Source of the DNA: Thecamonas trahens ATCC 50062
Lineage: Eukaryota; Protista; Apusomonadida
Length of the DNA: 64,000 nucleotides
NCBI RefSeq assembly: GCF_000142905.1
Contig: NW_013657665.1
Coordinates: 436,039-500,038, forward strand
Direction of reading: 5' to 3'
The translations under genes were made by a program, and so were the position numbers. Positions 1 to 14,546 of this stretch are shown here, in pieces; the stretch's first letter is position 1, and each line of letters begins with the position of its first letter. The notes under the pieces are model-generated. The model had not been told where the DNA came from, made no database searches, and saw nothing but the letters and a program-made list of their open reading frames with translations.

Positions 1-3000
1 CATCGTCGGCGCTGCATAGTGCCGATCCTCACGCAGCGCGCACTGCGCTCGATGCCGCCACCAAGTCGATGAGCGACTTTACTGCCGAGACCCAGCTGCC
101 GCCATCACCAGACAAGGTTGTGGCGCGCGCACAAACTCGAGTGGACAACGAGCAGGCCCGACTCATCGACGCGCTCGCACAGTTGAAGCTGCTTGCAGTC
201 TCGTCGCGCTCATCTTCGCGCGCATCATCGCCTGTTCCGTCAGCCGACATCGAACACGGCGAGAGTGGCACCGAGTCGCTGGCCATGCCAACGTCTGAGT
301 TGGAAAGACTGCGGAGCGAACTGGACGCCGCTCGGGCAGGCAACGCTCGCCTGGAGGCGCAGGTCGAGGTGCTCTCGGCTAACATGGACCTTGCACACTT
401 TGCCGACGCCCACGCTTCGGCCGAGGCGGCGGCCGCCTCGGCAAAGGGCATCATGACCAGCGCTGGCGCCGACGATGAAGCCTTGCTTCGCGTCCGCGCC
501 CTTCAGGCGCAGGTCAAACGCCTCGAGTCTGTCGTCTCCATTGCAGCTGCACTCGTGGGTCATGAGGTTCTTGGCTCAGCAGCCGACGCTAGCGAGGTCA
601 AGGATACTGGCGGCTATAATGCTAGCTCTGCTTCAGGCTCGGACTCGTCATCGGACGACGGCAGTCGCGACACTCCACTAGACGCGCTGGCGGAGCGATT
701 GGGGCCGCAGCTAGAGCGCCTGGCCGAGGCCGCGTATCAGGCGTTCGAGTCCGAAGCAGTGGCTCAGCTGGAGACCGCGCTGGAAGCACGCCAGCGCGAG
801 TTGCACACGCTACTTGTGGAGCGCGGCGAGCTCGAGCTTGCAGAGGCTACCTCGGCGCGCGACGTGGCCGAAGTCGCGCTCATCCACGCCTCTGCCCACA
901 ACGCAAGCTTGCAGGGGCAAGTCGAGGGCCTGTACGCTACGTTTGGATTTATGGAGCTCCTCAACTTGTCGTCCCGGGTTGAGGCCGCGCGTGCGCTGGG
1001 CGTCGATGCGCTGATGAGTCGACTGGAGAGCGGCGAGACGTCTGCGGCACAGAGCGAGCTTGCCAAAGAGCTGTCGGAGCTCAAGAGTGGGGTGAAGCTG
1101 GCAACGTACGTGGCGCAGCAGCAAGATGCAGTGCACGCGGCCCAGGCGAAACTTGTCGCCGTGGTGTCCAAGCTTGAGGCTGAAAGTCCAGATGTTCTCT
1201 CTGATGAGCTCCGTTTGGAGCTTGCTGAAGCGCTGGACGTGCCTGCGCCACCAGCTGCCCTGCCTTCTGTGGCGGCTATGGCGAAGCGAGCAGCGCCCAT
1301 GCTGGATGCCGAAGTGGACGAGTTGAATGCGCTGCGTGAGTCTTCGGGGCGGGTTCGGGCTGGGGTCGAGCAGCTGGTTGACCACCTTGAAGCTGAGCTC
1401 CTGGGCCCGCAAGCGCGTGGTGCGCTCGACGAGCTTGTGGTGCTAACCGGCCTCTCACCGCTTGAAGGCCGCTCGTTGGCGGGCAGGCGGCTGACACGGG
1501 AGCGGTCTGCGTCATTTACCACCGAGGATCCTCACCTGGAGATTGCGGTGCTACGTCGTCAGCTGGCGTCGACCAAGGCACAGCTCGAGGGTGCACGGAG
1601 CATGGTCTCGCTGGGACGGTTTGCCGCCATTGAGCTCGACAAGATGGAGCACCGGGCACCGATTTCTGTGTCTGAGCTGGCCAAGCTGCAGTCAGAGCAT
1701 GTGGCAATCAAGGAGCGCAACGCGGCGCTATTGAAGGCGCGCAAAACCCTCGAATCGAAGACGTCTGTGCTTGCAGAGAAGCTGCAGGTGACACAAGAGA
1801 TGCTTGCCGGATACCTGGGCACCGACGGCGCGTCAGGAGCCCGACAAGTCGAGGCCCGGCTCGACGAGCTGGCAGCGGAAAAGGTGGAGTTGGCGGGCCA
1901 GCTGGACGCGGCGACCAAGTCGCTCGAGGCGATGACGCTCAAGGCCGCTGAGGCCCAGATGGCGTTGGAGCAGGCTCAATCGAGCGAGGCAGTCGTGTCG
2001 GCGACGACTGTCAGCAGCGGCCAGAGCGCCGAGCTCAGATCGCAAGTGGCAAGCCTTGAGGCTCAGGCCGAGACCGACGAGGCGGAGCGGCGGCGTCTGG
2101 CGAATCGGGTCGAGTCACTGTCATCGAGGCATGCGCAGATGGAGTCCATCCTGAAGGCATACCTAGAGAACGAGTCTCAGGGCTCGCAGGCACTCGCCAA
2201 TGAGTTTGACCGCATCCTGCAGGAAAAGTCCGATGTGGAGGCGGCGCTGGCGCAGCAACGGGCCGAGTCGTCCGCAGCACTGGCAGAAATGACAGAGCAG
2301 CTCGAGGTGCTCCGTCAGGCACAGGGCAACGTGCTTGATCGGGGCAGCCATCGCCGGGCGGTGTCGATGGGCGGCAGCGCTTCTGCGCACTCGTCCATCC
2401 AAGCACTGCATGAGCAGCTTGCGTCAGAGCGGGCGTCGGCGAGTGCAACCGAGGCCGAGCTCCGCGACACGATTGACGAGCTCAACAGACGCCTGGGTGC
2501 AGCGAATGCGATGTTGGGACAGTTTGTCGAGAGCGACTCGGCGTCCAAAACGGAGCTGAAGGGACACATTCAGGCTGTGGCAATGGAGAAGGAGGCGATG
2601 GAGGAGAAGATCCACGCTGCAGAGCAGGCGGTGTCGGTGGCCGAGCACGAGAGCCAGGTGGCTCAGCTGGAGATTGTCCGGCTGACCAACGAGAATCTGG
2701 TGCTCTCTTCAAAGATCAAGTCGCTGCAGTTCCAGGTAGAGCAGGCCGAGACATCGTCGCCGCGCAAGCAGGAGGCGCTTCTCCGACGGCAGCTATCGAC
2801 GTCGCTGGCGCGGCTTGACGCGGCTGACGGCAACGAGTCTGCGGCAGATTTGTCGGCAAGTGCGTTCGATCTGGATTTGGGTGACGAGACGCTGCGTCCA
2901 CGGGTTCGCGCGATAGCCGATAAGCACGATCTGTTGCGTGAGCTGCTTGGCACGTATGTGGCCGACGAAGAGCAGGGCGGTGGTAAGCTCCTGGACCAGC

Positions 3001-6000
3001 TTGACGCGCTTGTGGAAGAGCGCGCGGAGCTGGAAATGCAACTTGTGAAGGCGAATGCTGTGAAGGACGCACTGCTGACGTCGCAGGACCAGCTGCGTGC
3101 GCAGCTCGCTCAGGCTAAGCGGCGATCAGGCTCTGCGCTAGGCTCGCCAGCGGACTATGAGTCGGACATGGCGAGCGTGTTCTCCGGACCCGGCTCGGCA
3201 ACGGGCTCGCTTCCGGCGGACAACTCGGGCTCTCTGCTTGCGCAGCTGCGCGAGCGTAACACCGAGCTGGAAGCCGCCAACGAGGCACTTGGCGATCAGC
3301 TGGACATGTGGGACGCGCGGTTCAATGCGCTCATGAGCAAGTATGCAGTCATGCAGTCGACGCTCTCCGAGTACTTGCGAGACGAGCAGTCGGGCTCGCG
3401 AAACCTCGCCGTCGAACTAGGTGAGTTGCTCGATCAGCGCAATGCAGCAGAGCTCCGCATTCACGAGCTTACCAAAGAGCTCGATGCTGCACGAGCAGAT
3501 GCTCAGATGCTCAAGTCGACCGGGAGCGTGGGGCTACAGTCGGGTGGTGTGCACAACAGCCGGAGTCGGCGTGGCGATGCTGAGGCGGCGCAAACGCGCG
3601 ACCAGATGGCGTCGTTGCAGTCGTCGCTGGCAGCGGCGAACACGCGCGCGGCCGAGTTGGCGGCGCAACTTGAGGCGGTCGATGCCGCTCTGGGGCGCGC
3701 ATCGTCAACAGTGGACGCCGAAGGCGACTGCGGGCGGGCCGAGATTGTGGATGCACTTGTTGCCAAGGTCGGTGAGACCGAAGGTCAGCTCCGTGAGTCG
3801 CGACGACAGCTGATCGACGCCAATCTGCGGCGGCGGGCCAAGGCCGAGAGCGCCAGCAGTGCTATGAGTAGAGACGACGACGGATCTGACGGGCCGCGGG
3901 TGCACGCTCTCGAACGACGGGTCCAGGTGCTCACTGAGAAGTTGACAACGGTCCACGGCATGCTGGCAGGGTACATGGACGGCGAGGACGAGGCAAGCAA
4001 GCTGGAGCGTATCGACACTGTGGTGGACGAGCTGGCTGAGAAAAAGGCGTCTGCCGAGGCGCAGCTGCGCGAGACCGAGGCGGCGCTGCGAACTGAGTCA
4101 GAGGCTCTGTCGGAAGCGCGCCGCGAGCTGGAGCGTGCGCTGGCCAGTGGAGGAGGGAATGGCGAGGAAAGCCCAGATATGGAGGCGCTGCGAAAGGCTA
4201 AGGAAGATGTAGAGCGGAAGCTGGAGGCTCAGCTGCGGGTGGTGGACTCGCTGCGGTTCTCGGTGCGGGAGTACGAGCGCGACTATGAAGTTGCCGACTC
4301 TGAGCGGGCGTTGTACTCGTCGGAGCACGAATACGTGCTGAAGGCTCTCAATGCTGAGCGCAAGTTGCATGATTTGGTGCCACTGCGTGATGCAAAGCAA
4401 GCGGTCGAGTCAATGCTAGCTGTCTCACGGGCCAACGAAGACATGCTGGCCAAGGCGCAGCGCAAGGTGGCGCGGGCCGAGGAGCGATACGAGGAGCTGG
4501 AGTTGGAGTCGCAAGAGGCGATGGACGCGCTGGAAGAGCGCATGTCGCTACTCTCGGCCAAGCATGAAAAGCTTCACGGAATGCTGTCGGCGGTGATGAC
4601 CAACTCGCAGATGGAGGACTCTGACCGGAACGCGTTGGACGTGGTGGTGTCTCGACTCGACGAGATGGTGGACGAAAACGCCAAGCTGGTGACCCAGCGC
4701 GATGTGCTTGCGAACCAGGTGACCGAGCTGGAAAATGCTGTCGAGCGTAGCAAGGTCGATGCTCCTCCAGGTGGCGCGAGCGATGCCGAGATCGAGGCAC
4801 TCGAGGCCGAGCACGAGGCCGAGATGGAGGCTCTCAACGGTCGTGTCGTACGACTGGCAGACAAGCTGCAGTACGTAGAGACGATGCTGACCCGTGCGCT
4901 CGAGACCGAGGGCGAGGGGACCGCTGACGCCGTCTATGCTGCGCTTGACGAGGTCCTTGCTGCCAAGCGCGCTCTGGAGCTGGAGAATACGCGGTTAGCG
5001 GCGGAGGTGGAGGCTGCTCGCGAGGCTGCAGACGATGTGGAGACGGAGGCGAGTACGGATGCTGAGGCAGAAGCCAGGTTTGAGGTTCTCAACAAGCGGG
5101 TGGCCAAGCTTTCGGACCGGCTGGTGTACGTCCAGGACATGCTGCGGGCTGCGCTAGAGGCCGAGGATGCCAGTGCAGTGGATGCCGTGTACGCGCGGCT
5201 TGATGAGCTGGCCAACGAGAACGCCGAGCTGAAGGCCAGGGCGCAGGACTCGACTGGAGACGAGGTTGGGGCGGATGCGGCGGCAGCAGCAGAGGCAGAA
5301 GCCAAGCTCGAGGTTCTCAACAAGCGGGTGACCAAGCTTTCGGACCGGCTGGTGTACGTCCAGGACATGCTGCGGGCTGCGCTGGAGGCCGAGGATGCCA
5401 GTGCAGTGGATGCCGTGTACGCGCGGCTTGATGAGCTGGCCAACGAGAACGCCGAGCTGAAGGCCAAGGCGCAGGACTCGACTGGAGACGAGGTTGGGGC
5501 GGATGCGGCGGCAGCAGCAGAGGCAGAAGCCAAGCTCGAGGTTCTCAACAAGCGGGTGACCAAGCTTTCGGACCGGCTGGTGTACGTCCAGGACATGCTG
5601 CGGGCTGCGCTGGAGGCCGAGGATGCCAGTGCAGTGGATGCCGTGTACGCGCGGCTTGATGAGCTGGCCAACGAGAACGCCGAGTTGTCAGAGCAACTAC
5701 AGACAGTGACGAGAGAAAGTGAGATGGAAGTCGGAAGCAACAAGAGCGGTGCGACAGTCGAAGCCGACGTCGATGCCGAGACGATCAAGGCTAATGTGCG
5801 CCAGGCGTTGGAAGTGACAGACGAGGCCGAAAGAGCCGAGGCTGTGATGTCAGCTGTGGAAGAGCTTTCGTCGGCCAAGGACGCAGCCGAGGCCGAGTCT
5901 CTGACGCTGCGGCGCAAGATGGTCCTGCTTGGTGCCAATGAGGAAGATGTGGGCACAAAGCCAGTCGGAACGCTGTACGAGCAGCTGCGGGCGAGCGAGG

Positions 6001-9000
6001 CTGCACGGCGTGAGCTCGAAGTGAGAGTGTCCCAGCTGGAATCTGGCGATGTCGGACCGCTTGCACATGATGTGATGTGCAAGACGGCGACAAGCGAGTC
6101 AAGCGGCGAGTCCCTGGAGGCACTGAAGCACAAACTTGCAGGTATGCAGGAAACGCTGTCGCGGTACATCCACGAGTCATCGCGCGACCGGGACGCGGAC
6201 GCGGTGACCGCGACGATTGAGGAGCTCATTGCGCGGCGGATCGAGCTGGCTCGCGAGAACAATGCGCTTCGGCGCGCTGCAGAGCTGAGCCCCGAAGCAC
6301 TCGCCGCGCTGACATCTCCTGGGCCATGGATCCGTAGGGTGTGGCGGCTGGCACGACAGGCCGCCACGCCGCGTGCACCGGCTTCTGCGCTCGCGGCGAT
6401 GCGGTCGGTGGTACGCGATGCGCGCGAACAATCAGCCCGTTTGGAAGAGTCACTCGAGCAGGCTGTGCGCCGGCACGGAGAAAGTGAGGAGGCTTTGGAG
6501 CAAGCGACGATGGAACTTGCGCATGTTCGCGGTGAGCTTCTGTCTTCTGTTGCGAATGTGGAGAAGATGACTGCTGCTGCCGAGGCCGCCAGGCTTGCAG
6601 AGTCCAAGGCTGTCGAAGCCGCTGGGGTGCGCACGAGGGAAGTCGAAGCTGCCAAGGCCGAGGTCGAGGCTGCTGCCGAGGCCGCCAGGATTGAGGTAGA
6701 GGCTGCCGAGGTGCGCGTGCAGGAGGCTATTGCAGCGAAGGAGGATGCCGAGGCACGGGCCGAGGCGGCCGAGACAGCCAAGGTTGAAGCTGCTGATGCT
6801 GCCCAGGTGCGCGTGCAGGAGGCTGTGGTGGCAAGGACGGATGCCGAGGCGCGGGCCAAGGCTGCTGTCGAGACCGCCAGGATTGAGGTTGAGGCTGCCC
6901 AGTTGCGCGTGCAGGAGGCTGTCGCAGCAAAGGAGGATGCTGAGGCGCGAGCCGAGGCGGCCGAGGCAGCCAAGGGTGAAGCCGAATCGGCGGCCGAAGC
7001 GGCCAAGGCCGATGCTCAAGCTGCCGACGCGCGAGCCAGGGAGGCTCAAGCTATGGTCGAGTCCGCGGTGGCTGCCAAGTCCAAAGCAACAGAGCTTGTT
7101 GGCGAGCAGCAGCGAGCTGCGGCGCAGGCCGATGCAGATGTTGCTGCTGCCAAAGCACAGGCTGCGGCTGCCCAGAACGCAGCTTCTGAGGCCGAGGCTG
7201 CGGCTGCAACTGCCAAGGCCGAGACCGAGGCTGCCAAGAGTGAGGCCGAGGCTGCCAAGGCCGAGGCCGAGGCTGCCAAGGCCGAGGCCGAGGCTGCCAA
7301 GAGTGAGGCCGAGGCTGCCAAGAGTGAGGCCGAGGCTGCCAAGAGTGAGGCTGAGGCTGCTCGCGCCAAGACGGACAAGGCCGAAGACGAGGCTGTGGCT
7401 GCCAAGGCCGACGCCGAGGCTGCTGTCGCCAGGCTAGCCGAGGCCGAAGACGAGGCTGCGGCTGCCAAGGCCGAAGCCGAGGCTGCTGTCGCCAGGCTAG
7501 CCGAGGCCGAAGACGAGGCTGCGGCTGCCAAGGCCGAAGCCGAGGCTGCTGTCGCCAGGCTAGCCGAGGCCGAAGACGAGGCTGCGGCTGCCAAGGCCGA
7601 GGCCGAGACTGCTGTCGCCAGGGTAGCCAAGGCCGAAGACGAGGCTGCGGCTGCCAAGGCCGAGGCCGAGACTGCCCACGCCAAGACGGGCGAGGCCGAG
7701 ACTGCCGCGGCGGCAGCACGTGCTGAAGCTCGACAGAGCATTGCTGACGCCAAGTCAAAGCACAAGGCGTACGCCAAGTCGTTGCAGCGCCAGATCCTGG
7801 AGCTCAACAACGAGGTTTCGTCGCTGCAGGAGCAGCTGGAGCTGGCTCGCGGTGCGGTGGTGGGGTGGGAACGTGCGCAGCGATCGGCCATGTCGGACGC
7901 GCTGTCAGCAGACGCGACTGCGGCCAATCACGAGCTGGAGCAGGCCAAGGCGCGGGTGGCTGTAGTCGAGGCGCGGAACCACGCGCTGGAGGCCCGACTG
8001 CATGAGGTCGAGCGCGAGAACACAGTGCTCACCCATTCGATGTCTGTGGGTGGTACCGGCGGTGGTGGCGGTGCTGGGAACACGTCTGGCATCTCCGTCT
8101 CACACTTTTTCAACGAGTCGTCCATCTCCATCCTCGACGCCGGCCGACTTGAGCGCGAGATGGCAGACTTGAAGCAAGCCAAGCTCGAGGCTCAAGTTGT
8201 CGCTAACGACCTGCGCCGGGAAGTTGCGGAGCTCACCGAGAAGCTCGCCAACACCTCGACTGACGCAGAGCTGGCCGTCAGAGTTGAGCAGCTGGAGGCC
8301 TCGCTCGCGGGAGCCGACGCCGATGTCGCCGCTGCCCGCAACGAACTCCGCAGCGAGTCTGAAGTCGCGCAGCGCCGTATCGCTCACCTTGAAGAGGCAC
8401 TCGCCCGGCTCAAGCTCTCGCTGGCCGACGCAGACTCCAAGTTCCTCGCCAAGGAGTCAGAGGCAGTTATGCTGGCCGAGGCCAAGGGCCAGGCCGAACT
8501 CTCTGCCAGCAGCGCGCTTAGCAAGCTCGAGACCGAGGCTCACGATCGGCGCGCTGCCCTCGCTCGCGTAGCGGCTCTGGAGGGCGAGCTGGAGGCAACC
8601 CAGGCCGCACTCGTCGAGGCCCAGGACGAGCTGTCGCGCATTTACGAGGACATGGTGCCCAAGGCCGCGTACTCGGAAAAGGTGGCTCAGGTTCGCATCC
8701 TCTCCGATGAGCGTGCCGTTCTCCGTGGCGAAGTCGAGGAGATGCGCATCGCCAAGAGCGATCTCGAGTACGAGGTCTCTGTTCTCCAGACCAAGTACGC
8801 CCACCTCGCCACCCTCCGTTCTCCCAAGCCGCTGGCGCACCCATCCGGGGATCCCGCATCGGTCCGCGGCGCCGACGCCTCACCGCGCCTCACTCGTTCA
8901 TCGTACCTCACCGAAGCTCTGGCCATGGACGAGGCCTCACTTCGGTCATCACACACTGTCCGCGAGTCACTCAGCACCAGCGAGGACTCCTCTCTTGCCC

Positions 9001-9398: not shown

Positions 9399-10638
9399 AT
9401 GACAACGTCTACTCTCCACAACGGAATCCGCATCGGCAGCCGTGTACGCACCGCCTCTCGCCATGCCCTCCCCCACGCCAAAGAGGGAGATCAGTCCGTT
9501 GGCCACAACTGCATTCAAACTTTTGCACTCACTCTCCCCCCCCCCCCCTCCCCCCCCCCCCCACCCACACACACCCACCCACCCAACCCCTTCCCCTTGC
9601 CGCTTCTTCTCACAGGTCGCCGTCCATGGCCTCGACACAACTCCCGTGCCCGGAATTGTGCGGTATGTGGGTGAGGTCCAATTCGCGTCCGGCATGCATG
9701 TCGGGGTCGAGCTGGCAAGCCCCATCGGGTCCTGCGACGGCTCGGTCGACGGCGTGTTCTACTTTGAGGCACGGGCCGATCACGGCGCTATCGTCCGCGC
9801 GCACCACGTCGAGCCGCTAAAGCGAGCCCGGCCGGCTTCGGCAGATGTGGCTCGAAGCAAGGTGCGTGGAGCTCGGGCGAGTCGCAAGCCGCGGCCAGGT
9901 TCGGCCCAGATGCGTGGAACCATTGCCGACGCCAACTGCCATGAGACGCAGACAGCATTGAGGGAGGCCAAGGCGCGGCTCTCGCTTGGAGACAGGGTGC
10001 GATCGCACGGCCTCGATGGAGTCATTCGCTACATTGGTGTTCCACAGTTTGCCACAGACGAGCACCCGGTGTGGATCGGGATCGAGCTCGACAAGCCGGC
10101 CGAGCTGACTGCCGGATACGCGCTCAAGCACAAAGGCTTCTTCTACTCGATCGGGCGCAACGACGGGACAGTGATGGGCGAAGAGTACTTTTGCACCGCC
10201 GAGCGGCACGCGCTGTTTGCGGCCCCAAGTGAAGTGCGCCGGCTCCTCCCTTCTGGTGAGATCCTCCCGACGCTTGAGGACGCGGCTGCAACCGCGACGG
10301 CATCCAACGAGGCCCACGTTGTCCGCTACCGCCGGCCGCCGGTCAAAGGCAAGACCAGGACTCGGCTGCGCCGTGAGCGCCTGAAGCGCAAGCTGGAAGC
10401 TGCGCAAGAGACCAAGGACAACATTGATGATGCGTTCATTCGGCTCAAGGCCAAAGAGCTGCAGGCACGTGCCATGGCAAACGACGAGAACGTCCGCCTT
10501 CCCACCGACGTCACCGACCGCTCTCTGGCGGCGCGCAAGCGAATGGAGTCGTCGCGGAGCCAGATCAAGCGGGCGGCCATGCGGGAGCGTCGGCTGATGG
10601 CGCAGCAGGCTGCAGTGCTAAAGCACCGCAAGGCATGA
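9399..10638 (+). CDS. Protein with two CAP-Gly domains and a basic C-terminal coiled coil; exons 9399-9443 and 9616-10638
   Basis: Intron GTACGC(9444)..TCACAG(9615) joins MTTSTLHNGIRIGSR to VAVHG...GIVRYVGEVQFASGMHVGVEL...GSCDGSVDGVFYF. Second domain LGDRV..HGLDGVIRYIG...WIGIELDKP...GRNDGTVMGEEYF. Confidence 0.9.
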
Positions 10639-10644
10639 CGACGA

Positions 10645-13600
10645 TCACTCGCCGCGGAGAAAGGCGAGATCGTCGACCTGGCGCATGACCCACGCAGTGT
10701 ATGCCTCTCGGGCTTTGTAGTACTCGGAGAGGAGCGCCTGTGCCATGTGATTGCGGAGAAAGGCTTTTCTGTCCACTGACGGCGCCGAGAGCGCGCCGGT
10801 AACAAACGCAACCAATCCTTCGAGCGAAAGCGGCGCCGGCCTCATACCCGCAGCATTCGTCGGGACCAGCGTCTCGTACGTCCCGGGCTGTAGGCCGTCG
10901 TTCCACGCACAAGCTCCGGGCGTGATCATGTCGCCGATGGCAGACTCGAGATGATTGCGGACGGCCGGCGGGACGCGCCCGGCGCGCAAAGCGCGCTCCA
11001 GCCGATCAAGGGTGGCGGCAGACGCGTCCGCCGAGCAGAACGCTGGATGCTTGACAACAGCAGCGAGGCTCGGTCGCTTGCTCGGTTCGGCGTCGAGCAT
11101 CCACACCACCAAGTCACGGAGGAAGAGATCGGTAATGCCTGCGAGGTCGGGCGCAACTGGCTTGCCTGAGTTGAGCATGGCAATGAGCGCAAGGTCGTGG
11201 TCTCTGGCGTCTGGGCCAAACGGATACTGGCCACCAGAGCCGACAAATGCGAGGGCGACGCCAAGGGTAAAGACGATAGCCGACTCGCGGAGACGGAGGA
11301 GGCCTGCGCTGGCGGTGGCAGCGGCGGCGTCCAAGCCGGTGGGCAGCTCAAAGGCTGCGAGCAAGTCGGCACCCGGCTTACGGGCGAGGACCGCGAGGAC
11401 CTCGGGCGCCTGGAAGCGAAAGCCGGCGTGGGAAAACTTGGGCGGCTCGGTGAGACCGAGGTTCTCGGCGGCAGACGGCAGATCGACGACCCGCAAGTAG
11501 CCGTAGTCCGAGAGGACAACTCGGCCGTCACGGAGAACTAAGAAGTTGGACGGGCGGATGTCGCCAAAGCGCACACCGGCGGTAAAGAGCGCGTGGGTGG
11601 CGTGAGCCATCGACGCCGCCACAAAGACAAGCTCGTCGGTGCCGAGCTGGGCGCCGTCGACATACGAACCGTCGGCGAGGAGCTTGCCGGTCACCAGCGA
11701 CTCAACTGAGCAGAGCGCGAGCGGCATGGCGGTGATGACGCCAGTCTCGCTGGTCGTAGCTCCGGAGAGGGAGTATGCCGCGCCTTGGTGCTGGATGTGG
11801 TACGGCATGAAGAGCGCCTGCTGCGAGTGCGACAGAGTCGTCAGCGCCGCCTGTACCGACGGATCGGGGCAGATGATGCCAGAGAGGACCTCGCCAGGGA
11901 TTGTGGTTTCGTTGACAACCTTGACAGCGACAACCTTGGGCTGCGGCTCGCCAGGCAGTGTGAGTAGACCATACACGGTCTTCGAGTCGATGCCGACTCC
12001 AAGCTCGGCGGCCGGGGTGTCGAGGACGTGGACCGCTACACCATTGGCAACGGCTGCGACTTGCCGGACGACAGAGGGCGTTTCAACGGGCGTCAACCTC
12101 ACGCGGATCTCCATTGTGTCGGAGTACTCGCACCAGCGGTGGAATGAGGCGTTGTCCGTGAGTGGGGCGGCAGAGGTCGATGGTGGGTTGGCAGGAGCGA
12201 CAAAGCCCGGTGGAGTAGCAGGCGCCGTCGCCGCGGTAGGCGGGACGGAGACAGGCGCGGCAGCGGCGGCCCAGCTCGACGGGGCCTGGGCTGGGGTGGG
12301 GGCTGGAGACAACGCTGGGCTTGGCGCGGATTCTGGGGCGGGGGCCAGTGTCGGAGTTGGGGTCGCAGTCGGGGCCGGGGCCGGGGTCGCGGTCGCGGCC
12401 GTGGCCGAGGTTGTTGCCGCCTCGTCGGCTGCAATGCATGCTCGAAGCCAGATGACCGGCCATGGCTCCTTGCTGCTGTCGTTACGGGCAGATCGAAAGA
12501 GGTCGGTGTAGTTGGACGGTGCGCAGTGCTGGTGGCGGATGGCAAGAGTGGCCTCGACCTTGGCCTTGCCGACACGGACCGACATGTGCGGGTGCGCCTC
12601 GACGAGGGCGACGACAGCGTCACGGAGCTCGCGGGTCTCGCGGGCGAAAAAGTAGCCAATGATGTCGTTTGTGGCGGCATCGTCGCGGACATAGAGAGTA
12701 AACTCGCCCTGAAAGATGTCGAGGTGAGCGGCAAAAGCCTTCTTGGGATCAACCGAGCCGGTGTGTAGGCCGCCGATGCAGACGGTACGGGCGACCGACT
12801 CTACAATAAACTCGGCGATGGTTTCTGTCGGCGACCAGTCGAGCTTGCGGCCGAGTGCGACAAGCTTTGCAATGACCAAAAAGTTGTCGGACGAGATGTC
12901 GATGGCCTCGTCAACGACGCGTTCAGCGTAGTGCCACACGCGGTGCTGCATGCCGTCGGGCAAGTTGCGGAAGGTGTCAAAATCGAGAAGAACGTCCTCG
13001 ACAGCGTCGAGGTGTTCGTTGCGGGTTCGCCACACACCGAACAGCTCCTCGACGGCCTCGGATGTGGAGCGCTCGCGCGGAGCGGCATCGACGCCATTCT
13101 CGGTGGTGGCGGCGTGCGATGCCAACGTTTTCTTGGCCTTGGTCTTCGTCTTTGTCCCGGACGCAGAGTCTGCAAAGATCTTGGCGATAGAGTTGAGATG
13201 CGGGACGAGTCTAATGACGTTCCACAGCTTGCGCTCCTGAGGCGAGTGGGCCCACTTGCACTTGAGCCCGCTAGTGCAGTCTGGGCCATCGCGGGCCACA
13301 AAGTCGCACATGGCATACACCTTGTTGGCTTTCATGTACAGCGGCGGGACGACGGGGATGATACGCTTGGCGTCGATCTTCTTCCAGCCCTTCTTTCCGA
13401 GCTTGACGGCATACTGAATGGCGTCAGCGGAGAGGACACTAGCGGACGAGGACGATGCGGAAGTGGACGATGATGCGGATGACGATGTAGATGCCATTGC
13501 ATGCTCGCAGCGCGATGCGTGTGTGTGACTGGAGCAGAGCTCGCAGCGGACACCAGTTGATCTTCGGACGTGCTTGCAGCGGACGACGACCTTGAGCGAG

Positions 13601-13668
13601 GGCTGGCTGTCCCAGCACGGCTTGCAAAAGCCAGCGAGGATGTCCAGCGGGTGTACGGAGGATGCCAT
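10645..13668 (-). CDS. CCCH zinc-finger + IRE1/RNase L-like divergent kinase + degenerate KEN-like domain
   Basis: CDF..DGPDCTSGLKCKWAHSPQERKLW finger; VAVKVV, FGDIRPSNFL, SDYG, QAPE, SGGQYPFG, ML..EPSKRPSLAAVVKHPAF match IRE1-family kinase C-lobe motifs. Start taken as ATG 13668. Confidence 0.75.
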   Translation of the reverse strand: MASSVHPLDILAGFCKPCWDSQPSLKVVVRCKHVRRSTGVRCELCSSHTHASRCEHAMASTSSSASSSTSASSSSASVLSADAIQYAVKLGKKGWKKIDAKRIIPVVPPLYMKANKVYAMCDFVARDGPDCTSGLKCKWAHSPQERKLWNVIRLVPHLNSIAKIFADSASGTKTKTKAKKTLASHAATTENGVDAAPRERSTSEAVEELFGVWRTRNEHLDAVEDVLLDFDTFRNLPDGMQHRVWHYAERVVDEAIDISSDNFLVIAKLVALGRKLDWSPTETIAEFIVESVARTVCIGGLHTGSVDPKKAFAAHLDIFQGEFTLYVRDDAATNDIIGYFFARETRELRDAVVALVEAHPHMSVRVGKAKVEATLAIRHQHCAPSNYTDLFRSARNDSSKEPWPVIWLRACIAADEAATTSATAATATPAPAPTATPTPTLAPAPESAPSPALSPAPTPAQAPSSWAAAAAPVSVPPTAATAPATPPGFVAPANPPSTSAAPLTDNASFHRWCEYSDTMEIRVRLTPVETPSVVRQVAAVANGVAVHVLDTPAAELGVGIDSKTVYGLLTLPGEPQPKVVAVKVVNETTIPGEVLSGIICPDPSVQAALTTLSHSQQALFMPYHIQHQGAAYSLSGATTSETGVITAMPLALCSVESLVTGKLLADGSYVDGAQLGTDELVFVAASMAHATHALFTAGVRFGDIRPSNFLVLRDGRVVLSDYGYLRVVDLPSAAENLGLTEPPKFSHAGFRFQAPEVLAVLARKPGADLLAAFELPTGLDAAAATASAGLLRLRESAIVFTLGVALAFVGSGGQYPFGPDARDHDLALIAMLNSGKPVAPDLAGITDLFLRDLVVWMLDAEPSKRPSLAAVVKHPAFCSADASAATLDRLERALRAGRVPPAVRNHLESAIGDMITPGACAWNDGLQPGTYETLVPTNAAGMRPAPLSLEGLVAFVTGALSAPSVDRKAFLRNHMAQALLSEYYKAREAYTAWVMRQVDDLAFLRGE

Positions 13669-14546
13669 AGTGCGTGCGGGTGTGGGTGGGGGGTGGGGGT
13701 GTGGGGGTGGGTGCGGGATGGGGTGGGTGGGTGGGGTGGGTGGGGTGGGAGAGTGGCGTGCGGTGTGTGTTGTGTAGTGTGTGTGGAATGAGGTGGTGGT
13801 GGTGGTGGCCGGCGTCTGGGTTTGGGTCGGCTGGTGGCTATGGCCGGTGGTGGAGTGGGTGGGTGGCGGAGGAGGGGAAGGGGGGGGGGGGGGGNNNNNN
13901 NNNNNNNNNNNNNNNNNNNNNNNNNNNNNNNNNNNNNNNNNNNNNNNNNNNNNNNNNNNNNNNNNNNNNNNNNNNNNNNNNNNNNNNNNNNNNNNNNNNN
14001 NNNNNNNNNNNNNNNNNNNNNNNNNNNNNNNNNNNNNNNNNNNNNNNNNNNNNNNNNNNNNNNNNNNNNNNNNNNNNNNNNNNNNNNNNNNNNNNNNNNN
14101 NNNNNNNNNNNNNNNNNNNNNNNNNNNNNNNNNNNNNNNNNNNNNNNNNNNNNNNNNNNNNNNNNNNNNNNNNNNNNNNNNNNNNNNNNNNNNNNNNNNN
14201 NNNNNNNNNNNNNNNNNNNNNNNNNNNNNNNNNNNNNNNNNNNNNNNNNNNNNNNNNNNNNNNNNNNNNNNNNNNNNNNNNNNNNNNNNNNNNNNNNNNN
14301 NNNNNNNNNNNNNNNNNNNNNNNNNNNNNNNNNNNNNNNNNNNCGGCAGGCGTCCGAACCCCCCCCCCCCCCTCCCCCTCCTCCGCCTCCCCCCCCCCCT
14401 TCCCCCCTTCCCCCACCACCACCAGAGCACGGATAGAGGACATCGCCACCCAACTCACACTCAACTCACACCCATTTCCTCTCTTCCCTCCCTCCGTTCC
14501 TCCCTCCTCTCCCTTCCTCCTCTACCACACGCTCGGCACCGTCGCC

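What the first reader, a model, noticed from the sequence alone, without database searches (positions are those of the whole stretch)
10645..13668. Soluble IRE1/RNase L-like kinase-KEN protein with CCCH zinc-finger input: candidate RNA-sensing module
Seen: an N-terminal CxxC and a CCCH finger (C..AHS..E...W, the ZC3H7/HELZ-type signature); no signal peptide or TM; a kinase with IRE1-type C-lobe motifs (SGGQYPFG, KRPS..AVVKHPAF) followed directly by a helical KEN-like tail. HRD is FGD, DFG is DYG, and the KEN RN..H segment appears as LVAFVTG. Known: IRE1 senses through an ER luminal domain and RNase L through ankyrin repeats binding 2-5A. Inference: a third architecture in which RNA binding gates a kinase/KEN effector, or a catalytically dead regulator, possibly in antiviral or stress RNA control.
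Basis: partly seen in the sequence, partly recalled or inferred. Interest (0 to 1): 0.8.

Follow-up and report, generated by a model that had tools for sequence, protein, structure and literature searches.

The report
Zinc-finger IRE1 relative, nuclease site lost
The marine flagellate Thecamonas trahens encodes a soluble, very diverged relative of the stress sensor IRE1 and the antiviral enzyme RNase L that carries an RNA-type zinc finger but has lost every RNA-cutting residue, so it is most likely a non-cutting RNA-binding regulator and not a new RNA-cutting sensor.

Summary
Window 10645-13668 (minus strand) is one unbroken 1007-codon ORF in Thecamonas trahens with no membrane segment.

- **Finger:** it carries a real CCCH zinc finger. 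A profile of five T. trahens copies best matches the solved ZC3H7A finger.
- **Tail:** the 130-residue helical tail overlays the whole KEN ribonuclease domain of IRE1 in an AlphaFold model (human IRE1 Z 25.2, 363 residues aligned). A language-model structure made without an alignment gives the same match.

- **Nuclease site gone:** all four KEN catalytic residues (Tyr, Arg, Asn, His) are replaced, here and (bar the Asn) in the only relative found, a 300-aa metagenome fragment. An RNA-gated nuclease is therefore unlikely.
- **Kinase not clearly dead:** it keeps the core Lys, Asp, Asn and Asp but has lost the helix-C Glu and the His and Arg of HRD.
- **Architecture not new:** a 2013 survey of the HEPN superfamily already lists kinase-KEN proteins with CCCH fingers, and this search found one with intact sites.

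I read it as a new, doubly degenerate variant of a known family. Moderate interest.

The parts
10645..13668 (-). Whole ORF, 1007 codons plus stop. One gene with no intron needed.
   Evidence: The public model P0001 equals residues 58-1007. GC3 stays at 0.64-0.88 along the whole frame.
13501..13626 (-). N-terminal Cys/His cluster, residues 15-56 (CxxC ... CxxC ... CxH). It lies upstream of the public start codon M58 (13495-13497).
   Evidence: VRCELC...CEH aligns with VRCGDC...CLH, which precedes the first finger module of the C65 paralogue. This suggests that translation starts at M1; that is an inference.
13201..13395 (-). CCCH finger module, residues 92-156. The finger proper is C121-H141 (13246-13308), with a conserved W.(P)ID..R.IP lead-in and an HS..E...W trailer.
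   Evidence: Five copies in three T. trahens proteins share invariant P108 C121 C131 C137 H141 E145 W149 P156. Their profile's best PDB hit is ZC3H7A 2d9m at E 1.7e-5. Pfam zf-CCCH_DUS3L scores only 17 bits, below its cut-off.
12433..13071 (-). Middle region, residues 200-412. It is predicted mostly helical with one beta hairpin. Its fold and function are unknown.
   Evidence: No Pfam hit. No homologue by word search. No paralogue in the genome. The AF2 model has pLDDT 47 and is unusable. Atlas neighbours are weak.
12160..12429 (-). Ala/Pro/Thr-rich low-complexity linker, residues 414-503.
   Evidence: Of its 90 residues, 30 are A, 23 P, 14 T and 9 S. The part that the model covers, from residue 500, has pLDDT about 30.
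11038..12066 (-). Degenerate protein-kinase domain, residues 535-877. Kept: GxGxxS, the VAVK Lys, D703, N708, D721 and APE. Changed: helix-C Glu to Gln615, HRD to FGD, DFG to DYG, helix-F Asp to Ile. The IRE1-family GxHPFG motif reads GQYPFG.
   Evidence: Pfam Pkinase scores 31.1 bits, just under the 31.7 cut-off. Motif mapping comes from alignment A2. The model aligns to kinases at Z 23-25.
10648..11037 (-). KEN-fold tail, residues 878-1007, without the ribonuclease residues.
   Evidence: AF2 pLDDT is mostly 85-95, with one dip to 63-76 near residues 910-929. VIA alignment to human IRE1 6urc_B gives Z 25.2, rmsd 3.5 and 363 aligned residues; model 32-496 matches chain 560-963, while plain kinases stop at model residue 383. 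The top Foldseek hits, about 35, are all IRE1. The ESM Atlas model aligns with KEN-bearing clusters over residues 520-1001. An in-session KEN HMM does not hit the tail.
10786..10836 (-). Former active-site helix, residues 945-961 (APLSLEGLVAFVTGALS), opposite (Y)D..S..DLLRxxRNxxxH of IRE1.
   Evidence: The segment is 43% identical to the relative P0002, against 31% for the whole tail.

Best explanation
This is one soluble protein and a highly diverged member of the IRE1/RNase L kinase-KEN lineage.

Its N-terminal part carries a zinc-binding module whose CCCH finger is of the ZC3H7/TTP RNA-binding type. A flexible Ala/Pro/Thr linker joins that part to a kinase-like domain, and a KEN-fold domain is packed directly behind the kinase.

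The KEN domain cannot cut RNA by the known mechanism, because the catalytic Tyr, Arg, Asn and His are all replaced. The kinase-like domain keeps the residues needed to hold nucleotide and metal but lacks the helix-C Glu and the His and Arg of HRD. It therefore most likely acts as a nucleotide-binding switch or dimerisation module, as in RNase L, and not as an efficient kinase.

My proposed mechanism is inferred, not shown. The finger brings the protein to RNA or to RNA-protein particles. The kinase-KEN body then serves as a non-catalytic scaffold or dimerising platform. Its conserved former active-site helix would be reused as a binding surface, possibly pairing with or competing against the two nuclease-competent kinase-KEN proteins of the same cell.
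For: **One ORF, soluble:**

**Real CCCH finger of an RNA-binding type:**

**Kinship with IRE1/RNase L:**
- The best PDB sequence hits are IRE1, and the alignment runs from the C-lobe into the first KEN helix.
- Six of the nine best non-orthologous hits in 1.84 billion proteins carry KEN, one of them weakly, as do 34 of about 150 hits overall.
- The nearest ESM Atlas feature cluster is IRE1-like, at 0.98.

**KEN fold of the tail:**
- The AF2 model has pTM 0.80, and the top Foldseek hits are all IRE1.
- VIA alignment gives Z 25.2 with about 100 more aligned residues than any plain kinase.
- The alignment-free Atlas model gives the same answer.
- An anchored profile comparison is colinear over 192 columns.

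**Loss of catalytic residues:** seen in both the target and P0002, against near-universal retention in recognisable KEN domains.

**Purifying selection on the tail:** it is 31% identical to P0002 overall and 43% at the former site.

**Paralogues in the same genome:** a live IRE1 and a dead-kinase/live-KEN protein.
Against: - No experiment and no transcript evidence is available.
- The AF2 alignment contained KEN-bearing proteins, so the model could lean towards that fold.
- The tail alone is not significantly KEN-like by sequence: the HMM gives no hit, and hhalign of the tail alone gives E 0.05 with probability 1%.
- A kinase-only tree does not place the protein securely. Its nearest neighbours are kinases without KEN. 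Kinase HMMs built from non-KEN hits score it higher than one built from KEN kinases. The AU test of KEN-bearing kinases plus the target as one exclusive clade gives p 0.04.
- The kinase keeps Lys, Asp, Asn and Asp, so real phosphotransfer is not excluded.
- RNA binding by the finger is inferred from family resemblance only.
Confidence: 0.6

Rival explanations
1. It is an atypical but active protein kinase. The finger recruits it to RNA-protein particles, whose components it phosphorylates. The KEN-fold tail is a purely structural appendage.
For: The beta-3 Lys (VAVK), the catalytic Asp703, Asn708, the metal-binding Asp721 and APE are all kept, and GxGxxS is an acceptable glycine loop. From general knowledge, non-RD kinases with Gly in place of the HRD Arg exist.
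Against: The helix-C Glu is Gln and the HRD His is Phe. The helix-F Asp is lost, and the helix-C region is poorly modelled with an insertion. Pfam Pkinase falls just below its cut-off.
Confidence: 0.22
2. This is the first reader's main reading: an RNA-gated kinase/KEN effector that cleaves RNA once the finger has bound its ligand.
For: The architecture parallels sensor plus kinase plus KEN in IRE1 and RNase L. Intact kinase-KEN-CCCH proteins exist elsewhere, such as P0065. An R967-x6-H974 spacing occurs in the tail.
Against: All four known catalytic positions are replaced in the target, and three of four in P0002. R967 and H974 are not conserved in P0002 and lie in a different helix.
Confidence: 0.05
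3. The tail is an unrelated helical extension. Its likeness to KEN comes from modelling with an alignment that held KEN proteins.
For: There is no significant sequence match of the tail alone to a KEN profile. The kinase-only phylogeny is unresolved.
Against: The ESM Atlas model, made without an alignment, also aligns with KEN-bearing clusters through residue 995-1001 at TM 0.61-0.63, against 0.50-0.52 for kinases without KEN. The tail has the right length (130 aa). It starts at the HP(A/F)F junction as in IRE1. The conserved Trp and the LL..(I/V) helix are colinear.
Confidence: 0.08
4. It is a gene-model artefact or a decaying gene: two neighbouring genes read as one ORF, or a pseudogene.
For: In 64% GC DNA long open frames arise easily, and many spurious ORFs overlap this locus. 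The linker is low-complexity. There is no transcript evidence.
Against: There is no in-frame stop anywhere between finger and kinase, so a separate upstream gene has no end. A relative from another organism conserves the C-lobe and tail at 31-42% identity without breaks. The codon-position GC pattern is typical of coding sequence in the folded domains.
Confidence: 0.05

Closest known systems
IRE1 (yeast Ire1, human IRE1alpha/ERN1), cytosolic kinase-KEN unit
   Same: The kinase fold is followed directly by a KEN-fold domain. The C-lobe signature G.(H/Y)PFG and the HP.F junction are shared. IRE1 gives the best sequence and structure matches in the PDB.
   Different: There is no signal peptide, luminal sensor or membrane segment. 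The KEN Tyr/Arg/Asn/His are all replaced. HRD and DFG are altered. A CCCH finger module sits at the N-terminus.
RNase L (ankyrin repeats, pseudokinase, KEN)
   Same: It is soluble. Its kinase-like domain probably binds nucleotide without being an efficient kinase. The order is sensor-like N-terminal part, then kinase, then KEN. RNase L-like clusters are among the nearest structures.
   Different: There are no ankyrin repeats and no 2-5A pocket. RNase L keeps an active KEN nuclease; this protein does not.
Kinase-KEN proteins with CCCH fingers (Anantharaman et al. 2013, PMC3710099, Table 1; example P0065 found here)
   Same: They combine a protein kinase, KEN and a CCCH finger in one soluble protein.
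   Different: P0065 has HRD, DLG and LLRIIRNKHQH intact, and carries two classical C-x8-C-x5-C-x3-H fingers at the C-terminus. Here the finger is N-terminal and of the ZC3H7 type, and both enzyme sites are degenerate.
T. trahens contig C11 protein (L002; earlier scan note s1-748576)
   Same: It is from the same genome, is soluble, has a diverged kinase-like domain plus KEN, and falls near the target in the kinase tree.
   Different: It has lost the kinase motifs altogether but keeps RAYD and VRNFEAH, that is, the nuclease site. It has no zinc finger. BLASTP similarity to the target is insignificant.
ZC3H7A CCCH zinc finger (PDB 2d9m)
   Same: The finger pattern C..C..C.FAH...E..EW is the best PDB match of the five-copy profile, at E 1.7e-5.
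   Different: ZC3H7A is a TPR and multi-finger protein with no kinase or KEN. The T. trahens module has its own W.PI..P lead-in and an upstream CxxC cluster.

Membership tests
IRE1/RNase L kinase-KEN family | A protein-kinase-fold domain | tested here: met
   Pfam Pkinase scores 31.1 bits (cut-off 31.7). The AF2 model aligns to kinases at Z 23-25 over model residues 38-383.
IRE1/RNase L kinase-KEN family | A KEN-fold domain fused directly to the kinase C-lobe | tested here: met
   The model superposes on human IRE1 residues 560-963 with 363 aligned residues. The top Foldseek hits are all IRE1. The Atlas model, made without an alignment, agrees. Caveat: the AF2 alignment held KEN proteins, and the tail alone does not reach significance by sequence.
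IRE1/RNase L kinase-KEN family | KEN ribonuclease residues (Tyr, Arg, Asn, His; the Rx4-6H motif of HEPN) | tested here: not met
   These positions read Pro, Thr, Gly and Ser in alignment A2. In P0002 they read Pro, Leu, Asn and Ser. In sequence-recognisable KEN domains among the hits, 28-32 of 37 rows keep each residue, and most other rows are gaps.
IRE1/RNase L kinase-KEN family | The kinase domain groups with those of KEN-bearing proteins | tested here: inconclusive
   The target lies inside an SH-aLRT 91 clade of 44 domains that holds all 30 KEN-bearing ones plus 13 others. Its nearest neighbours lack KEN. The AU test gives p 0.04 for an exclusive clade. The HMM score test is not in favour. 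The ranking of database hits is in favour.
IRE1 proper (unfolded-protein sensor) | Signal peptide, luminal sensor domain and one membrane span | tested here: not met
   No hydrophobic segment exceeds 1.52. The canonical IRE1 of this genome lies elsewhere, on contig C59.
RNase L proper | N-terminal ankyrin repeats that bind 2-5A | tested here: not met
   There is no ankyrin match in Pfam at E up to 1.
CCCH (C3H1) zinc fingers | C-x(4-15)-C-x(4-6)-C-x3-H spacing with conserved aromatic and Gly context | tested here: met
   The spacing is C121-x9-C131-x5-C137-x3-H141. The four ligands are invariant in five copies. The profile hits ZC3H7A, TTP and Roquin fingers at E 2e-5 to 2e-3. Single-sequence Pfam hits are below the cut-off.
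CCCH (C3H1) zinc fingers | Binding of zinc and RNA | not testable with these tools
   This needs metal analysis and EMSA or CLIP.
Active eukaryotic protein kinases | Full catalytic set: beta-3 Lys, helix-C Glu, HRD Asp, Asn, DFG Asp | tested here: inconclusive
   Lys (VAVK), D703, N708 and D721 are present. The helix-C Glu is Gln615, HRD is FGD and DFG is DYG. Activity cannot be decided from sequence.

The most novel reading that the evidence does not exclude
The kinase-KEN body has been converted into a non-catalytic RNA-guided switch. The ZC3H7-type finger docks on particular RNAs. Nucleotide-dependent back-to-back dimerisation, the IRE1/RNase L mode, then brings two dead KEN domains together. 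Their conserved former active-site helix (FV..ALS..AP) holds RNA without cutting it, or caps the live KEN of IRE1 or of the C11 paralogue as a built-in inhibitor. That would be the first pseudo-nuclease regulator in the IRE1/RNase L family.
Probability: 0.15. Interest if true: 0.65.

Novelty: new variant of a known kind. Interest (0 to 1): 0.4.

Why it matters
IRE1 and RNase L are the two studied uses of the kinase-KEN unit, and in both the output is RNA cleavage. This protein keeps the fold and a conserved surface at the old active site while dropping every cleavage residue, and it adds an RNA-type zinc finger.

If the protein is functional, the kinase-KEN unit would have a use that does not depend on cutting RNA, such as scaffold, decoy or RNA clamp.

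Thecamonas trahens also holds a graded series in one genome: IRE1 with a live kinase and live nuclease, the C11 protein with a dead kinase and live nuclease, and this protein with a degenerate kinase and dead nuclease. That is a convenient natural set for asking what each part of the unit contributes.

The reach is limited, because only one fragmentary relative was found in very large databases.

Tried and rejected
**Word-index protein searches.** I searched with the whole protein, with residues 690-1007 and with residues 100-412. Each returned only the protein itself. Two of the three were capped at 8000 candidates.

**Metagenome contig scans.** One scan used the target/P0002 alignment and one used P0002 alone. 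Neither found anything. The contig of P0002 is 916 bp and its DNA could not be fetched, so the architecture of the relative is unknown.

**Pfam KEN model on the whole genome.** PF06479 finds two other loci but not this one.

**In-session KEN HMM and hhalign of the tail alone.** Neither was significant.

**BLASTP against the two T. trahens paralogues.** The match to the C11 protein was insignificant; the only hit to IRE1 (E 1e-4) lies in the kinase core, not in the tail.

**Kinase-only phylogeny, AU test and HMM score comparison.** All were unresolved or slightly unfavourable. They are confounded by long branches and by the way the non-KEN hits were selected.

**AF2 of residues 1-415 with a five-row alignment.** The model had pLDDT 47 and I did not search with it. 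Atlas neighbours of the N-terminal part are weak; RRM/CCCH features score 0.82 and TM is under 0.4.

**Rfam on the window.** Nothing was found.

**An alternative Rx6H site (R967...H974).** I considered and rejected it because it is not conserved in P0002 and lies in the wrong helix.
Full report
**What is there.** Earlier notes of this scan say the window comes from Thecamonas trahens. It is 64% GC with closely packed genes on both strands. On the minus strand, 10645-13668 is an unbroken frame of 1007 codons. The public protein model P0001 is the same sequence from M58 on, at 950 aa. The frame stays open upstream of M1, through a C/A-rich tract into an assembly gap at 13895-14343, so the true start is not fixed.

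**Layout, in residues of the 1007-aa frame.**
- 15-56: a Cys/His cluster
- 58-78: a Ser-rich stretch
- 92-156: a CCCH finger module
- 200-412: a region of unknown fold
- 414-503: an Ala/Pro/Thr linker
- 535-877: a kinase-like domain
- 878-1007: a helical tail

The strongest hydropathy window scores 1.52 and lies in a kinase helix. The membrane span of T. trahens IRE1 scores 2.5. The protein therefore looks soluble.

**The finger.** The spacing is C121-x9-C131-x5-C137-x3-H141, followed by S..E...W. Single-sequence Pfam matches are sub-threshold (zf-CCCH_DUS3L at 16-17 bits).

Searching the genome with residues 84-415 picked up weak matches on contigs C65 and C73. Reading those frames showed four more copies of the same module in two long proteins of unknown function. 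The five copies align with invariant P108, C121, C131, C137, H141, E145, W149 and P156.

A profile of that alignment finds the solved ZC3H7A CCCH finger as its best PDB match (2d9m, E 1.7e-5). Hits to a C3H1-type domain protein and to TTP-type and Roquin fingers follow. The finger belongs to a class whose characterised members bind RNA; that last point rests on general knowledge of the family.

The CxxC cluster upstream of M58 resembles the cluster that precedes the first module of the C65 protein. This hints that the public model is 57 residues short.

**The kinase-like domain.** Pfam Pkinase scores 31.1 bits against a cut-off of 31.7. I mapped the motifs on a 47-row alignment (A2).
- Kept: the glycine loop (GVGIDS), the beta-3 Lys (VAVK), D703 within FGD, N708, D721 within DYG, APE and the C-lobe Arg.
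- Changed: the helix-C Glu is Gln615, the His and Arg of HRD are Phe and Gly, and the helix-F Asp is Ile.

The domain is therefore degenerate but not stripped. Nucleotide binding is plausible and weak catalysis is not excluded.

Several family-specific features point to IRE1/RNase L:
- GQYPFG lies opposite G.HPFG, and KHPAF sits at the junction.
- IRE1 gives the best matches among all PDB sequences (E 4.4e-5), and the alignment runs from the C-lobe into the first KEN helix.
- In a full HMMER scan of 1.84 billion representatives, six of the nine best non-orthologous hits carry a KEN domain, one of them weakly, as do 34 of about 150 hits overall.
- The nearest ESM Atlas feature cluster is IRE1-like, at 0.98.

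A tree of kinase domains alone does not settle the matter.
- The target sits inside a clade (SH-aLRT 91) that holds all 30 KEN-bearing domains plus 13 others.
- Its nearest neighbours are kinases without KEN, and long branches meet there.
- An AU test of KEN-bearing domains plus the target as one exclusive clade gave p 0.04. That test also forces the KEN-bearing domains to be monophyletic.
- Kinase HMMs built from the non-KEN hits score the target higher than an HMM built from the KEN-bearing ones.

The non-KEN hits were selected from an enormous pool for their likeness to the target, so I treat these tests as inconclusive.

**The tail.**
- *Sequence alone.* The tail is not recognisably KEN by sequence. 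PF06479 finds two other loci in the genome but not this one. An in-session KEN HMM misses it. hhalign of the tail alone gives E 0.05 at probability 1%, although the alignment is colinear.
- *AF2 model.* The structure evidence is much stronger. An AF2 model of residues 500-1007 has pTM 0.80 and tail pLDDT mostly 85-95. Its top Foldseek matches, about 35 of them, are all IRE1 kinase-RNase structures (E 4e-13, about 480 aligned columns).
- *VIA alignment.* VIA alignment to human IRE1 6urc_B gives Z 25.2, rmsd 3.5 Å and 363 aligned residues. Model residues 32-496 match chain residues 560-963, which is the kinase plus the whole KEN domain. Ordinary kinases stop at model residue 383 with about 265 aligned residues.
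- *Check against alignment bias.* The AF2 alignment contained KEN proteins, so a lean towards that fold is possible. The ESM Atlas's own model is made without an alignment, and it also aligns with KEN-bearing and ankyrin-kinase clusters over residues 520-1001. The TM-score is 0.61-0.63, against 0.50-0.52 for kinases without KEN.
- *Anchored profile comparison.* C-lobe plus tail against C-lobe plus KEN is colinear over 192 columns, with probability 99.2%. The significance comes mostly from the C-lobe.

**The nuclease site is gone.** In A2 the IRE1 string (R/K)(K/R)YD..S..DLLR..RN...H lies opposite MRPAPLSLEGLVAFVTGALS. The catalytic Tyr, Arg, Asn and His read Pro, Thr, Gly and Ser. In the KEN domains recognisable by sequence among the hits, each of these residues is kept in 28-32 of 37 rows, and most of the remaining rows are gaps. 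Anantharaman et al. 2013 put retention of the motif in KEN at about 95% (PMC3710099). An R967-x6-H974 spacing further on is not conserved in the relative and lies in another helix.

**Relatives.** The only true relative found is P0002, a 300-aa fragment on a 916-bp metagenome contig (E 5.9e-18, 37% identity).
- It covers the C-lobe and the whole tail colinearly, including the same insertion after APE.
- It reads Pro, Leu, Asn and Ser at the four catalytic positions.
- Identity to the target is 42% in the C-lobe, 31% in the tail and 43% over the former active-site helix. That argues for selection on a surface that is no longer catalytic.

Word searches and two metagenome scans added nothing.

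The same genome has two further kinase-KEN proteins.
- A canonical IRE1 lies on C59 with a membrane span, HRD, DFG, RNKGRH and a Ser/Pro insertion in KEN.
- A 628-aa protein on C11 has no kinase motifs but keeps RAYD and VRNFEAH.

Both had been noted earlier in this scan.

**Comparison with what is known.** The protein works like, or at least is built like, RNase L: soluble, with an N-terminal ligand-binding part, a nucleotide-binding pseudokinase and then KEN. It fails the defining catalytic test for the KEN nuclease. It has neither the luminal sensor of IRE1 nor the ankyrin repeats of RNase L.

The combination of kinase, KEN and CCCH is not new as an architecture. Table 1 of the 2013 HEPN survey lists it. 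My search turned up P0065, with intact HRD and RN...H plus two C-terminal CCCH fingers, and P0108, with a RanBP2-type finger. No paper in the library reports an experiment on such proteins, and none mentions IRE1 together with Thecamonas trahens.

What is new here is the doubly degenerate state combined with an N-terminal ZC3H7-type finger module.

**Mechanism, with its status.**
- *Shown from sequence and models:* one soluble chain, a real CCCH finger, a kinase fold, a KEN fold and loss of the nuclease residues.
- *Inferred:* the finger binds RNA; the kinase-like domain binds nucleotide and mediates dimerisation as in RNase L; the dead KEN acts as a binding surface, scaffold or decoy.

I put about 0.6 on this overall reading. 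The rivals get about 0.2 for an active atypical kinase with a structural tail, 0.05 for an active RNA-gated nuclease, 0.08 for a tail unrelated to KEN, and 0.05 for a gene-model artefact.

**Left open.**
- The 200-412 region has no match of any kind, and its AF2 model is unusable (pLDDT 47).
- The start codon is undecided.
- Whether the relative also carries a finger is unknown.

**Verdict.** This is a new variant of a known kind and of moderate interest.

Noticed in passing
L002 (G000:C11:341932-345105), ORF 46-1932 +: This is a 628-aa soluble protein with an N-terminus that looks like a mitochondrial presequence. Its kinase-like domain lacks HRD, DFG and the beta-3 Lys, while its KEN domain keeps RAYD and VRNFEAH. 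That is an RNase L-like design without ankyrin repeats. It is the same protein as earlier scan note s1-748576.
   Followed up: partly
L001 (G000:C59:147231-150518), ORF 31-1878 +: The canonical T. trahens IRE1 cytosolic part has an intact kinase and RNKGRH. It carries a Ser/Pro-rich insertion of about 70 residues inside the KEN domain. This matches earlier scan note s1-755078.
   Followed up: partly
L012 (G000:C65:36500-44500) ORF 2725-5628 +; L013 (G000:C73:78000-84000) ORF 3212-5137 +: Two long proteins of unknown function each carry two copies of the same finger module (CxxC...CPxC cluster, W.PIRP lead-in, CCCH, HS..E..EWNY trailer). They have no other Pfam domain. This looks like a lineage-specific zinc-finger family.
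   Followed up: partly
P0065 and P0108 (hits): P0065 (589 aa, on a 45-kb contig) is an intact kinase-KEN protein with two classical C-terminal CCCH fingers. P0108 (372 aa) is a kinase C-lobe plus KEN plus a RanBP2-type zinc finger. Soluble kinase-KEN proteins with RNA-type fingers and live nuclease sites therefore exist in uncultured eukaryotes.
   Followed up: partly
P0003, P0004, P0008 (hits): These proteins have two tandem kinase-KEN units each, and P0003 also has a Death domain. In one unit of P0004, P0008 and P0009 the catalytic Arg is Gln (FIQNV..H).
   Followed up: no
window 10636-10647: The stop codons of the convergent neighbour (ORF 9442-10638 +) and of this gene (10645-10647 on the minus strand) are only 6 bp apart, so the 3' untranslated regions must overlap.
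   Followed up: no
window 13669-14430: The frame stays open upstream of M1 through a C/A-rich tract that would read as Pro/Thr/His, into an assembly gap of 449 N at 13895-14343. The shared upstream region with the divergent neighbour on the plus strand is therefore incomplete.
   Followed up: no
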